Shown piece by piece: positions 15,466 to 28,804 of a stretch of DNA of 64,000 bases. The stretch's first letter is position 1. Each line of letters begins with the position of its first letter. The notes beneath the pieces were generated by a model. That model did not search any database, was not told where the DNA came from, and was given only the letters and a program-made list of their open reading frames with translations. The DNA lies in assembly GCA_028534125.1 (NCBI GenBank), contig CM052822.1:77934001-77998000 (forward strand). The letters are read 5' to 3'. A program made the translations under genes and the position numbers. Source of the stretch: Lama glama. Lineage: Eukaryota.

Positions 15466-15965
15466 NNNNNNNNNNNNNNNNNNNNNNNNNNNNNNNNNNN
15501 NNNNNNNNNNNNNNNNNNNNNNNNNNNNNNNNNNNNNNNNNNNNNNNNNNNNNNNNNNNNNNNNNNNNNNNNNNNNNNNNNNNNNNNNNNNNNNNNNNNN
15601 NNNNNNNNNNNNNNNNNNNNNNNNNNNNNNNNNNNNNNNNNNNNNNNNNNNNNNNNNNNNNNNNNNNNNNNNNNNNNNNNNNNNNNNNNNNNNNNNNNNN
15701 NNNNNNNNNNNNNNNNNNNNNNNNNNNNNNNNNNNNNNNNNNNNNNNNNNNNNNNNNNNNNNNNNNNNNNNNNNNNNNNNNNNNNNNNNNNNNNNNNNNN
15801 NNNNNNNNNNNNNNNNNNNNNNNNNNNNNNNNNNNNNNNNNNNNNNNNNNNNNNNNNNNNNNNNNNNNNNNNNNNNNNNNNNNNNNNNNNNNNNNNNNNN
15901 NNNNNNNNNNNNNNNNNNNNNNNNNNNNNNNNNNNNNNNNNNNNNNNNNNNNNNNNNNNNNNNNN
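15466..15965. other. Assembly gap (exactly 500 N)
   Basis: Run of N; the round length suggests a placeholder. Confidence 0.99.
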
Positions 15966-16866: not shown

Positions 16867-17148
<282 letters not shown>

Positions 17149-18837: not shown

Positions 18838-18978
<141 letters not shown>

Positions 18979-19671: not shown

Positions 19672-19851
<180 letters not shown>

Positions 19852-20207
19852 TGAAGACTGACGTCCTGTTTCTGTTTACCCACGGTTGGGACTTGTTCTT
19901 AAACTGTGTCTGAGCAGTGCAGGGGTTTAACCAGACCTCGTTTTCTTCTCCCTTTGGGAAAATGCTTTAAATTTAAGCCTTGCACATGAGCATAATAAAG
20001 GCTGTAATGTATCCATTTGCTGTTTTTGATTCTAATTAACTTCTTTTGCCACTGTGATTAGGCAGTGATAAGGTTGTGGACACGAAGGGCCCAGAAGTGC
20101 TGTTTCTGACTGAACAGTGAATTCTGTGTGAATTTGCCCTGTCACACCCTGAGTAGACACTGTGCATCATAGCAGATGACTTTGAGAAATTTGATCTGTG
20201 TGCGTGC

Positions 20208-20320
20208 TTTTTTTTTTTTAATTGAAGTATACTATGTGTCAGTTTCTGGTGCACAGGATAATGTTTCAGTCGTGCAATACAGACTGTGTCCATATTCCTC
20301 TTGCGCGTGCTTTTCTGATT
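20208..20320 (-). mobile_element. L1 3' end (cetartiodactyl-type)
   Basis: T-run + aattgaagtata...agtttctggtgcacag...tttcagtc, the reverse of the tail type seen at 59250-59330. Confidence 0.7.
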
Positions 20321-22242
20321 GTGCTGTGTTGTGACTGTCAAGGTCACACTTTCCGGGAAGAAGGGGCGTCTCTGGGATGAGGCGTCGCCGGTTCCCATCT
20401 TGGAGGGACAGTCATGCTCACGGAGACCCTGCCGCTCTAGCTGCTGCCTCGTCGTAGGAGAGGGTCTCTCAGCAGCGGCACGTCTGGCCCCCGTGCCCGA
20501 CTCGGGTTGTCCTGTGAGTCCTGGACGTGGGCAGTGTTGTGAGCCCACGGTGGTGTCTGCTGGAGCTGCTCCTCCGCTGCAGGGACTGTCCGGTGTGCTG
20601 GGTGACTTGGGAGGTTGGGCTCACTGCGCTGCTGTGGCCACTGTTGTCTTTCGGCTCATTGAGGGGAAACACATCCTGTGTTTGCCCCTTGGTTCCCGGG
20701 AGGCTGGTTGAGAAGACTGAACAGCATCTGTGGCCCCTCCGGAGGGAGACACGAAGCACAGCTCTGTGCACAGTCCCACAGGGAGACGGTGGGCCTTGCC
20801 CATCGCGGGCGCGAGGAGGGATCCTCACCGCCGTGTCTGGTAGGTGTTGGGCCTTTTAAATGGTGCACCCCTCGGTTTATTTCAGACGGGGGTTCGGAGA
20901 CCGTCCTTCGTTTTTTCTGTGGTGTGATGTGACTTTTTAAGAAGGGAGCTTATGGAGGGAGTGGTGTGTGTGTGTTAATGTATGTACTTTTTCACTGACA
21001 TGTGACAACAGGAGCTGATTGTGGGAGGAGACCATGAAAGGGTTTGGAAGACTTTCTGCTGTAATTACACGGCTACCGCAGACAGGCGCGTGTTGGGAAG
21101 GATCCCTGTGAATACAGACAGTAGCACATGTCCTTTATCAGTTGTCCTTCATGGACGTAAGAAATCTTACTGTAGGAAAAGCAGAGGATTCTAATTCTCT
21201 TTCCTGTCTTAAAATTACCTTTGTGTTTCATCACAGTCTGAGGCACACCCTAGAGCGTTGGTCTGGGGAGCAGGCAGTGTTGGGTGAGGCCTGTGTTTGG
21301 TAGCCCGCATCTCCTGGGCCCCATCTCTGTTCTCTGGACCTCCAGCTGCAGGTGGAGGCTCATGAGGCGGGGGCCCTGCCGAGGCCGGGCCTCTCTCATG
21401 TTGCTTGAGCACTTAGTTTCCTTTCAAAAGAAAGAACAGTGAGGGCGAATCCTTTAGTACCTGAATGGTGGCCAGATTTCGTTTTCCTGGGAACAGATCA
21501 GACAGGCCAGGCTTTCTCATTACAAGTGGCTTTCCTTGAGCAGCTCTTTCTAGAGTAAGGGTGGGTGAGTGAGTAACCATTACCCCACTGTCAGCTGTTA
21601 AACGTGCTGGCTCAACGTCTCCTAGACGGAGCACTGTGAACACGAAGCACTGGCGGGCACGTGCATTTCACAGAGAAGCGCGAGAGGTTGCCGCTGTGGC
21701 CCGCTCGCAGAAGTGCCTTCTGTTGGACTCAGAGCCGAGTTTAGGAGGTGCCCAGCCTTCCCGTAACTCAGGGCTCTCCAGCCTCTGCCTTCCATCCTGG
21801 GGCGCTTGAGGTTTTAACAGCAGACATTTCCCTGTGGTGCCCACAGGCGGTGTGGCAGTGATTCCGTCTTCATCCGTTCTAGGTGTTCTAGGTGCCTTCC
21901 ATTTTCAGGCTCTCAGGATTTACACACAGGAGGAGAAGCTGGCCCACGGCTACTGCGTGTCTGAGTTCACGGTGCAGTGCGCTGGCGGTACGTCCAGGGC
22001 AGATCCGTGGGCATAGGGCTGGGGGTTCTGCTTTGGTGGTGATTGGGTTCGTGTTTATCAGCTTCCAGATCCTGCTCCCTCAGCACTGTTGCCATGTCCA
22101 TTCATAGTAGTGCGTGGTCTTTTCATCTTCACTTTTGACACGACCCACTTTTCCCCCTCTCCTGTTTGGTTTACCAAAAAACCAAGAAAAATAGCTCGAA
22201 ATCTGTTAAAAGACATTTTGAGCTTGATTGTGCATTTGTCAG

Positions 22243-22329
22243 AATATAAAATGCCATGTCTGACTTCAGACTCCCCAAATAAAAGGGAAGGAAATGAGAA
22301 GAGCCAGCAAGCTGGTGGGGAGAGTGAAG
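22243..22329 (+). CDS. Candidate in-frame cassette exon in DNAJB6 intron 5
   Basis: catttgtcag|AATATAAA...AGTGAAG|gtatga; 87 nt, phase 1/1, no stop; (E)YKMPCLTSDSPNKREGNEKSQQAGGESE(G); a second in-frame acceptor at 22270 gives 60 nt. Confidence 0.4.
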
Positions 22330-22988
22330 GTATGAGGGGCGTTGGACAGGCTGCAAGCAATTCTGTGCCTGGGGACCAAGCTCTGAGAAACGTCACATTG
22401 TGAAGAGAGGATGTGGACCTGGGGTCCTGCTGGTGGGAGCCCTCCTCTGGGGGTGGGGAGGTAGTGGAGGCTGATTCTGAACTTGCCCTGAGCACTGGCT
22501 CTGAGACGGAGGGGTGCGGGCCAGACTTTCAAGGCTAGCCGACTTTGTTTAAATTCTTCCCCAAATATGGAGCACACAAAAACTAGCCCTTGTGAGAATG
22601 TAAATTGGAGAAGCAAATGAGTAGGGATTACCGTAATTCGAATCAGGGTGATCTCGTTATTAGTGAAGGACTCCGCTGCTCTGTAACGTGTTCTAAGGCA
22701 GGAGAGCAGCGAGTCAGGGCAGGAAGTGCTGCTGGGAAGACATGCTTATTGGCTTGTGCCTTCACGTTCGAAAGCCCAAACCACGCTCTGCAGCCGGAAA
22801 CTGCTTCCAGAGAGCGTGCTCACTTCAGCGCCCCCCCCCCCCCGGCAGTGGTCTCGGTGGCGGACAGTCACTGCGCTCAGCAGAGGGAGTGCTGGGCGTG
22901 CAGACGAGGCAGGTGGGGTGTGGAGGGGCGGCCTCTGCTCTGCCCTCTGCAAGCAGGGGGTAGTGAGTCAGTCGCTTTGCTCACCCAG

Positions 22989-23353
22989 GGTCCGAGGAGG
23001 TGGCCAGCGAGGAGTGGGAGCCTGAAGAGGAGGCGGTGGAAGACAGCTGGAGTGAGGACAGTGAGGTTCTGGACGTGGTGTCCAGCGAGGAGCTCGATCT
23101 CTTTAGCGAAGACGAGCCCAGTGAGGGCGGGGGCTGGGGCCTGGGCAGGCCCCCCAGGGAGGACCTGGAGTCCCTGTCCAGTGAGGGTGGGGCGAGTCTG
23201 GGGGACCTGGAGGAGATCATCGAGGAGTGTGAGGGGCCGCTGAGCGAAGACAGTGGGCCTGAGCTCGAGGCCCTGCTCGTGTACCCGCGAGTGTCCCGAG
23301 AGGAGGCTGGCCTGCCTGCTCAGTGTACCTGGAATAAAAAGTTCTGCTGCTAG
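22989..23353 (+). CDS. Candidate alternative terminal exon in DNAJB6 intron 5 encoding an acidic tail
   Basis: ctttgctcacccag|GG TCC GAG GAG GTG...; phase 1 matches the exon 5 donor; 120 codons, 37 D/E; AATAAA at 23333-23338; TAG at 23351-23353. Confidence 0.55.
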
Positions 23354-26219
23354 TGCCTTGATGTCGTCCGTGGCCAATTCCAGCAGCTGTTTTGGGGATG
23401 ACTGAAGAAACAGCAGAGGAGGGCCCCAGGAGCATCCAGCCAGCTGTCCTACAGGCCACCCTGAACTTTGAAGACCCTGGAAACAGTGTCTTTGCCTGTG
23501 TCAGTGTCCTGGGGCTACCCGGGAAGCTCCCCATACTGAGTGGTGGAGACGCCAGTGCTGGAGGATGGAGGTGTGAGATGAGGGTGTGGGCAGGGCTGCG
23601 TCCCTCTTCCAGGCCTCTCCCCGGCCTTTGGTGGCCTCGGATGGTCCTTGGCCTGCAGGTGTCATCGTTCTGTGTCTTCGCCTCATGCCCTCTTTCCACG
23701 TCTTGCCTCTGCCCACATTTCCTGTTGATCAGGACACATGGGGGTGTGGGGTCAGGGTCCACCCGAATGAGCTCATCCTGACCCTGTGGTCTGCAGAACC
23801 CCCGTTTCCCACATAGGGTTGCGTTCGCTGGCCCTGGGGTGGTGAATTTCACTCCGTTTGGTGGGGGCCCAAATTCATCCTCCAATGTATGGAGCTGTCT
23901 ATACAGTTTAGAAGCAGCAGATTTTGAAGGGGAAAGAAGGGGACACCTCTGAAGTCAGATGCACTGGGAGTAGAAGTCAGGTACGGTGCAGTGCGGTGCT
24001 GTGCAGAGCGAGCTCACAGCTTTCCTGCGGGGCTGACACGGTGCGGGGCCGGGGTACCCGCCTTACTCTGGCTCAGACTGACTTGCTCGCGGCTCATTTG
24101 AGAGAAGCAAGGAGTAAGACTTCAGATCTACATGAAAACGTGTCAGGTGTCCAGCTAAGGTAGTTGAAAGCACTTTTCACGCAGCTGTGAAACAACTGCA
24201 GGCCCCCGTTCAGTGCCAGGTCCTGGAGCAGGCAGCTCCGACGCCCCGCTCCTCTGCCTGGTGGGTGGTGCCCCGGTGTGGTGGGCGTGGGGGCAGGAAG
24301 GATGCTCTCTGCGCCTGGAGAGCTTCCTGTTGGAATGTGGAGCTGGTATTTGAAAACAGTTCATTTTCACATAAGACTTTTTCATCTGTTGGCAAACGTG
24401 GGGGGATGTTCTGGCGATATTCAGCTTTTCTGTGTACTTTGTGTTCTGCTGATCACCCCTGCTCCCAGTAAGGGAGAGGAATGGGTTTCTTGACAAGGTC
24501 TTTCTGGTGAGAGCTGGAGTGCGCCTCCCCGCGGGTGTGCCCCCTGCAGTGAGGTCTGCAGATGTCTTCAGCCGCACCGTGCTGGCAGCAGAGCCCTCCC
24601 TGTGCTGTGGTTTGGAGGCTTGTGACGCAGTTTGCAGGGCCACGTGGGTCAGGGTTTCCTGAGTGCCTTGCAGGGTCTGCTCGTGATCTCTTTCTCGTGG
24701 AATTGTGGTCCCTGTGGCTGAGGGCGGTTGGAGATGTTCTGCGACCACAGGTGGCGGGTGAGGCAGAGTCATGTTCTGGCCGGCCTCCTCCCACTTGGGG
24801 AATTAAAACAGGCACAGCGCAGGGTGTGCGGGAGTCATAGGGCGGAGGCAAGGGAGAAAGTATCTCTGGCTGGTTGGTGTTGGGCAGAGGGAGCCTACCA
24901 GGCAAGACACGCTGTTACCTGTAGGGTCCTTCTCTGAGGGGGCGAGGTTCTCGAGGAACCTGGGCCCTTGGTGTCTGAGATGGATGATTTGGATGCAGTG
25001 TCTGTATTTTGGTTCTTGACTTGGATGGGTTTTTGCAGCCCTTAGAAAATATTGTCCCAAACAGACCTGTGATGTGATTGGAAGTTACATTTTGTAAGAA
25101 GATAATTGTGTGGAAAGTTGAACGTGTGGTGATGTGTTCGGCGGGTATTTACTACGTGCTTACTGTGTGCTGCCAGGCGCCGCAGTGGAGCATGTTCTCC
25201 CGACCCCGTGCTCCCCAGGGGCCCGTTCAGCCTAACACCATCATGGCTGTGTTTTTAGTTTGCTCCCATTTTTGTTTATTTCAGATCCTTTCAAATAAAA
25301 TGTAAGAAATAATGCTTTAAAAATCTGGTTCGTCCTGAAGAAGTGTTGGGTAGCTGGGAGATCGCCTCCCTGAGGTCTGTTTGCCCCCGGCCTTCGAATC
25401 TCACGTGTTCTCTCTTCCCTAAGGGTCGCTCTGGTCGTGCCTGTGGTGCGCTGTGAGGGTCGCTCTGGGTACGCCTGTGGTGCACTGTGAGGACTTTTCC
25501 TTTGTTCGACAAGTCCGTGATGTGTTTAGAGCTTGTGTCTTGTCCAGTTTTCCCGGGTGCCTGGGCAGTCGGTGTGGGAGGCCCTGAGGAGGGGGCTGGC
25601 TGGCACCTTGGGTCATTGGTTCTGGCCTCTCATTGCTTGGGTTTCGTGTTCACTGGAACGTCTTCCTTCAGGACGAGGGCAGGACTGGCCATCACCTTGG
25701 CGTTGAGCCTTGCTCGGTGCCCTTCAGACGGGCGTAGAGCATTGGACTTGAGCTGATGTCTGTTTGTTGCTGTGTGGTTAGTCTGTCAGATACTGAATTT
25801 CGGTAAAATTCAAGGAAATGGATGGCTTTAAACATTTGTTTGACTTGGTTTTTCCTCAAGTCTTTTAACACGTGTGCATGTGAACGTTTGTCACGTTTTG
25901 CGCTCGGTTTTTTCCCACAGCGTTCAGTTCAGTGTACTTTTTTGCCGTAAATGTGACATTGTCACTTGGATTGTCGGTCAGTTGAGTGCTTTGTGGATGT
26001 CACCTTCTTGGACTTGGTGTAATATCTCAGAGGAGCAGGCGGGTATAAAGTTGAGGGCGAGTTTGATACAGGACACCCAGGGCGCTGAAAGGACAGGGCT
26101 CATTTGCAGGCCGATGCCTGTTTCCTGTGACGTTGGTGGCCCAGGACGCACCGTCTTGTTACGGGGTACAGACCTGACGAAAGAACTTGTGAAATGACCA
26201 GTTTCTAGAAACCTGTGAG

Positions 26220-26600
26220 TTCTGTGCTAGGTTCTCCAGAGAGACAGAGCCAACAGGAAGTTAGGAAATCTATCTAAGGAAGTTCAGTGTTTAAGTAATT
26301 GGTCACTTGACTGGAGACGGACAGCTTCCACATTTGCAGAGCTGATGTCCCAGTTTGAGCCCAGAGGCCGAGGCAGCTGCGCTGCAGGTTGGAAGCCGAC
26401 AGGACAGGCAGGAGAATCCGCAGGTGTTCAGGGGAGAGTCAGCCTTCTGCTCTGTTCAGCCCCGCAGCCGATTGGGCGGGTCCCTCCCACACTGGGGAGG
26501 CCAGCCTGCTCTGCTCAGTCCACTCACTCACCCAGAAGCACTTTGAGACACACTGATGGCAGGGCACCGTGCTGCCCTTGAGGATGACACAATCTGTCCA
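26220..26600 (-). mobile_element. MLT2-type (ERVL) solo LTR fragment
   Basis: ggttctccagagagacagagccaacagga...gtcagccttctgctctgttcag...gattgg...cccacactggggagg...ctgctctgctcagtccac. Confidence 0.7.
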
Positions 26601-28672
26601 TCCTTACTACTCAGCTGCCTTCTCTGAAGTGGCTTCTGAAGAAGGTGGTTTGTAATTGGGGAAGTCTTAATCAGCTCGGCGTAAACAAACTAAAACCATT
26701 TATTTGGTACTGGTGTCAGCGGACACCTCAAAAGCCTCACGAGCAACCTTGGAAGGTTTCGCTGCTGTGTACGAAGCTTAAGAAACAGTAACTAACGTGA
26801 TAGCTGTGATAAAAGGCGCATTGTGGAAGGCTGCAGTGCGCCGACGTAGATGAAGTCTCTCAGTGCACGGAAGAGCGCCGGGCTCAGGAACGCGGGGTGG
26901 GGAGCAAGAGCCTGGAGCTGGCCGTGTGAATGCTTTCTAATGGTCACTTGGGAGTGAGAGAGAAAATTACTTCACTGTGAGTTTCAACTGAGTTTGTAAA
27001 GTTTCTCTTAACGGGGAAGGGGGGGTCATGATGCAGGGGTGTTGGGTCTGAGTTCGGCGCTGCCGTGACAGTAAGGGATGAGGTGCCTTAGAGAACGCTT
27101 GGATTTTATTTGAACAGGATGATGCTTTGTAGAAATTCCCAAAATGTGTTGGGTAAAATTAGCACAATCTGGGGGCTAATTTGTGAGCAGGAGCAGCTGT
27201 CGCCTGCCGCTGGCTAGGACTCCCGAACCGCCCCAGGGCTGCTGGGATTGCGCTGTCCTTCCGCTAGCGCTTGGTTCTTTTGGGTCCCTCAGCAAGCTGG
27301 CGGTGACCGGTTTTTCTGAATGTTTCTTCTCCAGGCCCATTTCCCTGCGCTCTGAGTGGCTCTCTTGTTTCTGAGAGGCCTTGTTTCTGCCTCCTCTTCC
27401 CCCGCCACCATCCCGTGCTTTCCTGGGGCCGCCCTGGCCTCACCTCCCCCTGCGTCGTCACCAGGTCTCGGGGAACAGGTGCCCTGTCCTGGGGCTCGTC
27501 CTCCCAGACCGCTGCCCGAGTTCCGCTGCGGGTGGCACGTTGCTCCGGCCATGTTGTCTGGAAACATAAGCGCACCGTGGATCTCAGTTTCTACTTGGTT
27601 TCATGCTCCCTGTGTGCTGTTCTGTTTACTTTAATTGTTCCGCTTCTCAAATGTATTAATTCCCTGCTGTGGTCACTCCTGCCTTGTCTTAAGGATATGC
27701 CGTACGAGTTGATAGTTTCTGTGTCCTAGGTTGCTTTTCTCTTTCCCTTCGTGCATTGCTGTCCATCCATCAGGGGTCCTTGTTTTTATTTCTGAAAGGA
27801 CTCCCATATCCTCAAAAAAATACAGCACTGATAAATATAAAAAACAGACCCTCAGCTAATGTTTTACGAAGTTTATATAGTTCATGTTTTCAGTAAGTGT
27901 TCATTGATCCCCCTCCCCAATCCCTAAAGTGTCGAGGCTAATTTTGTTTTTATTTCCAGGGGCATCGTGGCAGCTTTGGTAGCTGTATAATGCCTGTTGT
28001 GTTGGTTTTCTATCAAAGAACAATGTAATGTCTGCCGATTGACCTTTAGCCAAATCTGACTTTAGCTAACGTTTTCTAAAAGTTTTTGGAGACATCAAGC
28101 TTACAGAAAAGTGAAAGGGATTCTTGAACACCCACGTGGTACAGCATGACAGCCGTTAAATTTTGCCTCACTTGCTGCAACATTCTCTGTGTCACAAGTA
28201 AATATGTAAGGGGAATCCTTTTTTTTTTTATTCCTGAATTATTTTGGAGCAGCCCAGACTCCGTGCAGTACAACGACTTAGCTGTGAAACCATCCTGACC
28301 TCTTAAGTGGCATCTGCTGGGACAGTGTCTGCCAGAACGTTCAGGGAAAATCCGTATCAAAGCAGCTCTCTGTCCGAGTCTGTGTATTAGTGGTGCGGAG
28401 TTTTACACGTGTATGTACCTTGTGTTTTTTTTTTGATTTAAATCAGTCCGCATTGTGGTCTAGCTTTAGTTGCATTGAACAGGTACGTGAAACGCCGGTT
28501 GGATGGACGTCAGCTGCTGTCCCGCGAGCTGCGTTGCTGGACCTCGGGGGTCGGCCGTCGTTCCTGATGGGACCGTGATACGAGGCGCTAACCCGCTTCC
28601 CCGTGTTGCAGCTCTCCCGTGAGAAAACAGACTTGGATAAAGGCTTCACAGAGCACTTCTGTTTGTTTTCAG

Positions 28673-28804
28673 AAGACCCATTTGAGGACCTCTTTGGGAA
28701 TCAGAGGGGCACCCGTAGGAGCCGGAACCGAGGCACAGGGTCGTTGTTCTCCGCTTTCAGTGGATTTCCTGCCTTTGGAGGGGGATTTCCTTCTTTTGAT
28801 ACAG
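28673..28804 (+). CDS. DNAJB6: DNAJB6 coding exon 6 (G/F to S/T region)
   Basis: gttttcag|AAGACCCA...GATACAG|gtacga; 132 nt; [44 protein letters not shown]. Confidence 0.95.

What the first reader, a model, noticed from the sequence alone, without database searches (positions are those of the whole stretch)
22989..23370. Acidic alternative terminal exon inside intron 5, in frame with the J-domain and G/F exons
Seen: the acceptor ctttgctcacccag| at 22988 is phase 1, matching the exon 5 donor. It opens a purine-rich 120-codon frame (SEEVASEEWEPEEEAVEDSWSEDSEVLDVVSSEELDLFSEDEPSE...WNKKFCC*) with 37 D/E and recurring S-E-D/E motifs, unlike the flanking intron. AATAAA at 23333 lies just before the stop at 23351. 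Inference: a protein of about 236 aa (about 265 with the upstream cassette) keeps the HPD J-domain and helix V. It replaces the S/T-rich and C-terminal client-binding/oligomerisation region with an acidic disordered tail carrying CK2-like sites and a SIM-like VLDVVSSEE. It could recruit Hsp70 to basic clients such as histones or protamines, or act as a dominant negative; these roles are speculative. The stop lies unusually close to the expected cleavage site.
Basis: partly seen in the sequence, partly recalled or inferred. Interest (0 to 1): 0.8.

Follow-up and report, generated by a model that had tools for sequence, protein, structure and literature searches.

The report
Known acidic-tail DNAJB6 isoform exon
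The acidic open frame inside DNAJB6 intron 5 is a real exon: it matches the last exon of a DNAJB6 isoform kept from echidna to placental mammals, which gene databases list but DNAJB6 papers ignore.

Summary
A phase-1 acceptor at 22988 opens a 120-codon acidic frame (37 D/E). AATAAA lies at 23333-23338 and TAG at 23351-23353. The frame alone is not beyond chance: local shuffles give P of about 0.05-0.14, and the same intron holds longer stop-free runs.

Comparison settles it. The peptide is the orthologue of the terminal exon of a DNAJB6 isoform of 247-287 aa in the proteins aligned (J-domain, first G/F exon, acidic tail). This isoform is annotated in monotreme, marsupial and many placental genomes. 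It is a curated mouse RefSeq protein (NP_001033030.2, 261 aa) and a cattle cDNA product (Q58DH3, 259 aa).

Most therian models insert a 35-codon exon, here intact at 21883-21987.

In this window every splice site, the frame and the poly(A) signal are intact. The tail has evolved fast (end branch 0.45 against a median of 0.07), and the ancestral stop is lost, which explains the stop next to AATAAA.

The proposed functions remain untested.

The parts
16974..17083 (+). DNAJB6 coding exon 3 (J-domain, ..[36 protein letters not shown]), shared by all isoforms
   Evidence: HPD-bearing frame with AG/GT borders read. Identical to the orthologous proteins aligned.
18869..18928 (+). DNAJB6 coding exon 4 ([20 protein letters not shown])
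   Evidence: Read. Borders tatag| and |gtacgt. Matches the orthologues.
19694..19804 (+). DNAJB6 coding exon 5 (first G/F exon with helix V). The donor is phase 1.
   Evidence: Read. The donor G|gtaagt lies after 19804.
21883..21987 (+). Exon B: 105 nt, phase 1 in and out, encoding (G)VLGAFHFQALRIYTQEEKLAHGYCVSEFTVQCAG(G). It is the exon that most therian acidic-tail isoforms place between exon 5 and the acidic exon.
   Evidence: tblastn of the buffalo and panda proteins on intron 5 gives E 8e-12 and 2e-15. Acceptor tccgtcttcatccgttctag|GT and donor G|gtacgt. Only 1 of 12 columns conserved at 90% or more is changed.
22989..23353 (+). Acidic terminal exon, coding part: split Gly codon, 120 codons, then TAG at 23351-23353
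   Evidence: tblastn with orthologous isoforms gives E 1.6e-36 to 3e-39 over 22985-23281. phmmer hits 2e-24 and below. Aligns without frameshift to 30 mammalian tails.
23333..23338 (+). AATAAA poly(A) signal, here inside the extended reading frame (codons N-K of WNKKFCC)
   Evidence: The read-through tail of the Pteropus model also contains W-N-K, which suggests a conserved TGG AATAAA. The cleavage site itself was not observed.
28673..28804 (+). DNAJB6 coding exon 6 ([13 protein letters not shown]...), the canonical partner of the exon 5 donor. It marks the end of intron 5.
   Evidence: Borders ttttcag| and |gtacga.

Best explanation
The frame at 22989-23353 is the orthologue of the alternative last exon of a mammal-wide DNAJB6 isoform.

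How it works. Transcripts that use the intron-5 acceptor at 22988 end at the AATAAA at 23333. They reach that acceptor either straight from exon 5 or through the 105-nt exon B at 21883-21987. They therefore never reach exons 6-10. The product keeps the J-domain with HPD and the first G/F exon with helix V. It lacks the rest of G/F, the S/T-rich client-binding region and the C-terminal oligomerisation domain. In their place it carries an optional 34-residue segment weakly predicted as a beta-hairpin, and an acidic serine-rich disordered tail of about 100-120 residues.

What is shown: orthology, exon structure, intact signals in this window, and conservation of the tail across mammals.

What is inferred: that the exon is still spliced and translated in this species, and that the protein brings Hsp70 to partners bound by the tail. 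The conserved core SEVLDV(I/V)SSEELD looks like a hydrophobic SUMO-interaction-type core followed by acidic or phosphorylatable serines.
For: Relatives and annotation
- eight relatives at 56-74% identity.
- those clusters contain buffalo XP_055447362.1 'DNAJB6 isoform X3' and panda A0A7N5J8I6.
- 46 proteins, nearly all annotated in sequence databases, from ruminants, carnivores, perissodactyls, bats, rodents, lagomorphs, colugo, strepsirrhines, armadillo, tenrec and marsupials.
- curated mouse NP_001033030.2 (261 aa, = G3X8S5), cattle cDNA AAX46471.1/Q58DH3 (259 aa), rat EDL86429.1.
- opossum, bilby, elephant and echidna (247 aa, direct exon 5 -> tail join).

Conservation
- the tails align with in-frame indels only and about 45 columns conserved at 90% or more.
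- The wallaby-armadillo path is only about 0.38 changes per site, so the tail is under purifying selection overall.

This window
- exon B and the acidic exon sit in intron 5 on the gene's strand. Both have AG/GT borders, matching phases and no stop or frameshift.
- the window groups with pig and ruminants (support 97/89).

Protein features
- the AlphaFold2 model gives a confident J-domain, helix 96-103, weak strands 126-148 in exon B (pLDDT about 50-56) and a tail with pLDDT 31-41.
- the solved DNAJB6 structure 6U3R/6U3S covers residues 1-117, which is exactly the shared part.
- PMC6127670 lists G3X8S5, 29.5 kDa, with acetyl S112 and K134 in mouse heart. K134 lies in the exon-B segment. This hints that the protein exists.
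Against:
- The window's tail is the second most deviant of 31. Seven of 48 highly conserved columns are changed (L->W, S->R, E->G, L->P and others), and the end branch is 0.45 against a median of 0.07 and 0.25 for pig.
- No annotated protein closer than 74% identity turned up, so the nearest relatives may lack a model for it.
- The open frame alone is compatible with chance at this base composition.
- The function rests on motif resemblance and on which domains are missing, not on any assay.
Confidence: 0.85

Rival explanations
1. Relic exon. The sequence descends from the conserved acidic exon, but this lineage no longer uses it. It is drifting and stays open only because it is G/A-rich and poor in T.
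For: - Long end branch, 0.45 against a median of 0.07.
- Seven of 48 conserved columns are changed, including L10W, S89R, E101G and L132P.
- The ancestral stop is lost.
- An open frame of this length occurs in 5-14% of local shuffles.
- No annotated isoform from a close relative was found.
Against: - There is no frameshift or stop in 155 codons (exon B plus tail).
- The only lineage-specific indel is one in-frame codon.
- All four splice signals and AATAAA are intact.
- Exon B keeps 11 of 12 highly conserved residues.
- The tail keeps its acidic, Ser-rich make-up and the SEVLDVVSSEELDLFSEDEPSE core.
- My rough estimate, not a computation: full neutrality along the whole branch should have produced several indels.
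Confidence: 0.25
2. Product of a separate nested transcript. An internal start in intron 5 gives an mRNA with exon B plus the acidic exon and no J-domain, so the tail acts on its own rather than as a DNAJB6 isoform.
For: Some annotations lack the J-domain. They are panda A0A7N5J8I6 (154 aa, starting in the intron just upstream of exon B), koala LOC144454140 (152 and 187 aa), Pteropus LOC120582014 and a Glossophaga 174-aa model.
Against: The curated mouse RefSeq, the cattle cDNA and most of the models found carry the J-domain joined in frame. Both new exons are phase 1 and match the exon 5 donor. No CpG island or in-frame ATG was seen just upstream of exon B in the window. Short models may simply be 5'-incomplete.
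Confidence: 0.12
3. Chance open frame, repeat or retrocopy of another acidic protein lying in a GC-rich intron.
For: The frame length is not significant on its own, and four of six frames are open here. Pfam finds nothing.
Against: The peptide is orthologous at E 1e-36 to annotated DNAJB6 isoforms from many mammals, with the same acceptor position. There is no poly(A) tract after AATAAA and no tandem or dispersed repeat structure. No other protein family was hit.
Confidence: 0.01

Closest known systems
Mouse DNAJB6 'isoform b', NP_001033030.2 / UniProt G3X8S5 (261 aa), and cattle Q58DH3 (259 aa, from cDNA)
   Same: Same gene and same intron-5 acceptor position. The order is the same: J-domain, first G/F exon, exon B, acidic tail. 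The window's tail is 68-74% identical to these over 97 columns.
   Different: The window's tail lacks the 8-residue SEELDQPxF block, as do pig and ruminants. It has lost the ancestral stop after ..LLVQQ and runs 25 residues further, through the poly(A) signal. It carries seven changes at otherwise conserved positions.
Pig Ensembl models A0A8D1MDT6 / A0A4X1TZJ4 (235 aa), slow loris XP_053462106.1 (246 aa), echidna isoform X2 (247 aa)
   Same: Exon 5 is joined directly to the acidic exon.
   Different: These are predictions in other species. Whether the window's species skips or includes exon B is unknown.
Canonical DNAJB6a (326 aa) and DNAJB6b (241 aa)
   Same: They share the J-domain and the first G/F exon. 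That exon contains helix V and the stretch [12 protein letters not shown], where, from my knowledge of the field, the LGMD D1 mutations cluster. The shared part is covered by PDB 6U3R/6U3S.
   Different: The acidic-tail isoform lacks exons 6-10, so it has no S/T-rich client-binding region, no C-terminal domain and no NLS. The review PMC13211831 and other papers describe only isoforms a and b.
DNAJC9, a J-domain protein that hands histones H3-H4 to Hsp70 (recalled from memory, not tested here)
   Same: The concept is similar: a J-domain joined to a segment that could bind basic partners.
   Different: No sequence relation was found, and DNAJC9 uses a folded histone-binding domain.

Membership tests
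Mammalian DNAJB6 acidic-tail isoform (mouse NP_001033030.2 type) | Lies in the intron after the first G/F exon of DNAJB6, on the gene's strand | tested here: met
   Exon 5 ends at 19804 and exon 6 starts at 28673. The acidic exon is at 22989-23353 on the + strand.
Mammalian DNAJB6 acidic-tail isoform (mouse NP_001033030.2 type) | Tail sequence homologous to G(F)EE..SEVLDV(I/V)SSEELD..SEDEPSEG..SSE(D/E)EAS..EELLSE(D/E)..SGPE.EALL | tested here: met
   phmmer 2e-24. tblastn 1.6e-36 to 3e-39. Alignment of 31 tails. 41 of 48 highly conserved columns are kept.
Mammalian DNAJB6 acidic-tail isoform (mouse NP_001033030.2 type) | Phase-1 acceptor at the conserved Gly codon, matching the phase-1 donor of exon 5 | tested here: met
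   cag|GG TCC GAG at 22988/22989. Spliced orthologues read ..G-G-F-E-E, while genomic read-through ORFs read ..P-P-G-F-E-E. This places the junction in the same codon.
Mammalian DNAJB6 acidic-tail isoform (mouse NP_001033030.2 type) | Upstream 35-codon exon B (VLGDFHFQALRIY..YEVTVQPAG), symmetric phase 1 | tested here: met
   21883-21987, 105 nt, intact AG and GT, 62% identical to the buffalo exon.
Mammalian DNAJB6 acidic-tail isoform (mouse NP_001033030.2 type) | Terminal exon: stop soon after ..EALL, followed by a poly(A) signal | tested here: inconclusive
   AATAAA is present at 23333. The stop is displaced 25 codons downstream to 23351, as in other cetartiodactyl-type tails with extensions. 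The cleavage site was not observed.
Mammalian DNAJB6 acidic-tail isoform (mouse NP_001033030.2 type) | Spliced and expressed in this species | not testable with these tools
only shows that some RNA-labelled runs of a related organism hold 18-24% of the sampled words.
   VLDVV-SSEELD in the window. The block is the most conserved part of the tail in 31 mammals. This is a pattern match only.
   Needs a binding assay.

The most novel reading that the evidence does not exclude
The acidic-tail DNAJB6 isoform is a working, pan-mammalian J-protein that the DNAJB6 field has overlooked. On this reading it would bring Hsp70 to partners bound by a conserved, CK2-primed SIM-like core (SEVLDVISSEELD), such as SUMOylated or basic nuclear proteins, instead of to amyloid-type clients. 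It contains the exon that, from my knowledge of the field, carries the LGMD D1 mutations, so disease alleles and 'pan-isoform' knock-downs would also hit it. In this window's lineage the tail would be evolving unusually fast.
Probability: 0.25. Interest if true: 0.6.

Novelty: already known. Interest (0 to 1): 0.35.

Why it matters
It also shows that the exon is already in RefSeq, UniProt and dozens of automatic annotations, so it is not a discovery.

For biology, the isoform is conserved across monotremes, marsupials and placentals. It keeps the J-domain and the first G/F exon, where the LGMD D1 mutations cluster (from my knowledge of the field, not tested here), but drops every known client-binding part. 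Yet reviews up to 2025 speak of only two DNAJB6 isoforms. Its expression pattern, partners and relevance to DNAJB6 disease models are open questions that could be tested cheaply in mouse.

Tried and rejected
- Reads. No read evidence exists.
I could therefore not fetch orthologous DNA, compute dN/dS or compare poly(A) signals.
- Pfam on the tail, on exon B and on the whole mouse isoform shows only the DnaJ domain.
- Tandem and dispersed repeat scans of 22000-24500 found only short, weak matches. I rejected a minisatellite or repeat origin.
- I rejected a retrocopy: there is no poly(A) tract after AATAAA, and homology stops at splice sites.
- I rejected a CpG-island or internal promoter at the exon: CpG observed/expected is about 0.5.
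- The bacterial promoter/terminator scan is irrelevant for this genome.
- Literature searches for 'DNAJB6c', 'isoform c', 'three isoforms', 'alternative last exon', 'transcript variant' plus 'testis' and accession numbers found no study of this isoform. The one trace is G3X8S5 in a mouse heart acetylome table.
- Not done on purpose:
  - a metagenome-contig scan, because it could return human contigs;
  - the large representative-protein search, because identity was already settled;
  - any look at human sequence or filling of the N runs.
Full report
**What is in the sequence**

The window carries DNAJB6 on the + strand. I read these coding exons:
- exon 3, 16974-17083, with HPD;
- exon 4, 18869-18928;
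- exon 5, 19694-19804, whose donor G|gtaagt is phase 1;
- exon 6, 28673-28804, starting EDPFEDLF.

Intron 5 is therefore 19805-28672.

Inside it, the acceptor ctttgctcacccag| ends at 22988. The exon starts with GG, which completes a Gly codon with the G left by exon 5. From there 120 codons run from 22991 to 23350. They hold 29 E, 8 D, 16 S and only 6 K/R. AATAAA is at 23333-23338 and TAG at 23351-23353.

**Is the frame more than chance?**

Not by itself.
- The stop-free run is 128 codons (22967-23350).
- Shuffling the local 600 nt (GC 0.64, strongly G-rich) gives a run this long in a given frame in 4.8% of trials, and in any + frame in 14%.
- The same intron has longer stop-free runs: 215, 140 and 139 codons on +, and 245, 215 and 207 on -.
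- Four of six frames are open at this spot.
- Pfam finds nothing.
- Repeat scans find only short, weak self-matches.

**What it is**

A word search with the peptide found eight unnamed ORFs at 56-74% identity, E down to 2e-24. They align in frame over the whole tail. [quoted passage not shown]

Searching with the non-canonical part of the buffalo protein returned 46 proteins, nearly all of them annotated in sequence databases. Most are 'DNAJB6 isoform X..' of about 220-290 aa. They come from ruminants, deer, carnivores, rhino and equids, bats, rodents, rabbit and pikas, colugo, galago and slow loris, armadillo, tenrec, pig and tammar wallaby.

Cluster look-up shows that the set includes:
- the curated mouse RefSeq NP_001033030.2, 'isoform b', 261 aa (= UniProt G3X8S5);
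- rat EDL86429.1;
- a cattle cDNA product, AAX46471.1/Q58DH3, 259 aa.

A search from the wallaby tail added opossum, bilby, elephant and echidna. The isoform is therefore present in all three mammalian subclasses. I did not test beyond mammals.

**Architecture**

Most therian models read as follows:
- exons 2-5, ending ..[11 protein letters not shown];
- a 35-codon exon B, (G)VLGDFHFQALRIYTQEKKLLHGYYMYEVTVQPAG;
- the tail, GFEEVASEELEP..SEVLDVISSEELD.FSEDEPSEG..GQGELLSEELE..SSEDEASPGD.EELSEECEELLSED..SGPEPEALLVQQ*.

A local tblastn on intron 5 alone places the tail at 22985-23281, E 1.6e-36 to 3e-39. It places exon B at about 21876-21989, E 8e-12 and 2e-15.

Read directly, exon B is 21883-21987. 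It is 105 nt, with acceptor tccgtcttcatccgttctag|GT and donor G|gtacgt. It is phase 1 on both sides, so it fits both exon 5 and the acidic exon.

By counting only, with no joined sequence built, searched or folded, the window would give about 236 aa without exon B and about 271 aa with it. The first coding exon was not found in the window. An N run at 15466-15965 lies upstream of exon 3 and was left as it is.

**The odd stop**

Most species stop right after ..EALLVQQ. Pig, the ruminants and this window have lost that stop and read on for different lengths:
- ruminants: ..LPLPRGRPAEQSL*
- pig: ..APLPPLPRGTGLHHRKCM*
- window: ..VYPRVSREEAGLPAQCTWNKKFCC*

In the window the frame runs through what used to be 3' UTR and translates AATAAA as N-K. 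This explains why the stop sits about where cleavage is expected. The read-through tail of a Pteropus model also contains W-N-K, which hints that TGG AATAAA is old.

**State of the copy in this window**

Intact:
- both acceptors, the exon B donor and the poly(A) signal;
- the frame over 155 codons;
- the only lineage-specific indel is one in-frame codon.

Deviant:
- Seven of 48 columns that are at least 90% conserved are changed (L->W, S->G, S->R, E->G, L->I, E->G, L->P). This is the second highest count among 31 species, after a phyllostomid bat.
- In a maximum-likelihood tree of the tail, the window groups with pig and ruminants (support 97/89). Its end branch is 0.45 changes per site, against a median of 0.07 and 0.25 for pig. 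The whole wallaby-to-armadillo path is only about 0.38.
- Exon B is better kept: 1 of 12 highly conserved columns is changed.
- No annotated protein closer than 74% identity was found.

I read this as an exon that is still coding-competent, on a lineage where constraint on the tail is relaxed or shifted. A relic cannot be excluded; I put it at about 0.25.

The grouping with even-toed ungulates outside pig and ruminants, together with the run types, makes me suspect a camelid. That is a guess and nothing rests on it.

**Expression**

This could not be tested.
- The look-up of sequencing runs listed probable DNA runs of the source species (82-92% of sampled words) and small RNA-labelled runs of a related organism (18-24%).

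**How it probably works**

The shared part, residues 1-117, is exactly what the solved DNAJB6 structures 6U3R/6U3S cover.

An AlphaFold2 model of the panda isoform, built with 18 orthologues, has mean pLDDT 54. It gives:
- a confident J-domain;
- helix 96-103 (helix V);
- two weakly supported strands in exon B (126-136 and 139-148, pLDDT about 50-56);
- a tail with pLDDT 31-41, which I read as disordered.

The isoform thus keeps the Hsp70-activating module. It loses the S/T-rich region and the C-terminal domain, which the DNAJB6 literature assigns to client binding and oligomerisation.

The tail has about 40 acidic residues and almost no basic ones. The mouse tail has 41 D/E and 0 K/R, and the whole protein has pI 4.2. 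The tails carry 6-10 S/T-x-x-D/E sites. The most conserved block, SEVLDV(I/V)SSEELD, fits a hydrophobic SIM-type core with an acidic, phosphorylatable flank.

My preferred mechanism is inferred, not shown. It is a J-domain adaptor that brings Hsp70 to partners bound by the tail, regulated by phosphorylation. Competition with isoforms a and b for Hsp70 is a second possibility.

One trace of the protein exists. A mouse heart acetylome table lists G3X8S5 (29.5 kDa) with acetyl S112 and K134 (PMC6127670). K134 lies in the exon-B segment, and the computed mass is 29.47 kDa.

**Known or new?**

The exon and the isoform are already in RefSeq (curated for mouse), in UniProt and in many automatic annotations, so the feature is already known.

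In the papers I could search, it is not discussed. A 2025 review and other papers name only DNAJB6a and DNAJB6b. Searches for a third isoform or for its accession numbers found nothing else.

I saw that ending in passing.

**Verdict**

- Observation: confirmed.
- Interpretation: right on the core (alternative acidic terminal exon in frame with the J-domain), wrong on the cassette, untested on function.
- Novelty: already known in databases, though functionally unstudied.
- Interest: 0.35.

Noticed in passing
window 21883-21987: An intact 105-nt, phase-1/phase-1 exon (VLGAFHFQALRIYTQEEKLAHGYCVSEFTVQCAG). It is orthologous to the exon that most therian acidic-tail DNAJB6 models carry. Because it is symmetric, some models (goat 358 aa, elephant seal 364 aa) appear to insert it into the long canonical isoform too. 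I judged this from lengths and 23% coverage and did not inspect it.
   Followed up: partly
tblastn with the buffalo, panda, beaver-like and other proteins gives no match there.
   Followed up: partly
window 20677-20787: Weak match (40% identity, E 0.001) to a 47-residue segment found only in buffalo isoform X3, between exon 5 and exon B. It is probably a rare or spurious exon of that one model.
   Followed up: no
window 15466-15965 and upstream: The first coding exon of DNAJB6 (MVDYYEVLG..) was not found by motif anywhere in the window. A 500-N run lies about 1 kb upstream of exon 3.
   Followed up: no
The pig model P0061 also ends in CCCVLT.
   Followed up: no
P0029, P0055, P0071, P0099/P0100 (panda, Pteropus, Glossophaga, koala): Several annotations give exon B plus the acidic tail without a J-domain. 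The panda model starts in the intron just upstream of exon B. These may be 5'-incomplete models or a real internal start.
   Followed up: no
P0095, P0061, P0049, P0059, P0062, P0069 (pig, squirrel, hamster, vole, Mus spicilegus): Models of 354-447 aa splice out of the acidic exon before its stop into exon 6 and onward. This would make the exon an internal cassette. They may be gene-prediction artefacts.
   Followed up: no
window 22838-22852 and 22880-23954 (- strand): There is a C run of about 14 just upstream of the exon, and very long stop-free runs on the minus strand (207 and 245 codons). I take them for a side effect of the GC-rich, T-poor composition. I did not search them.
   Followed up: no
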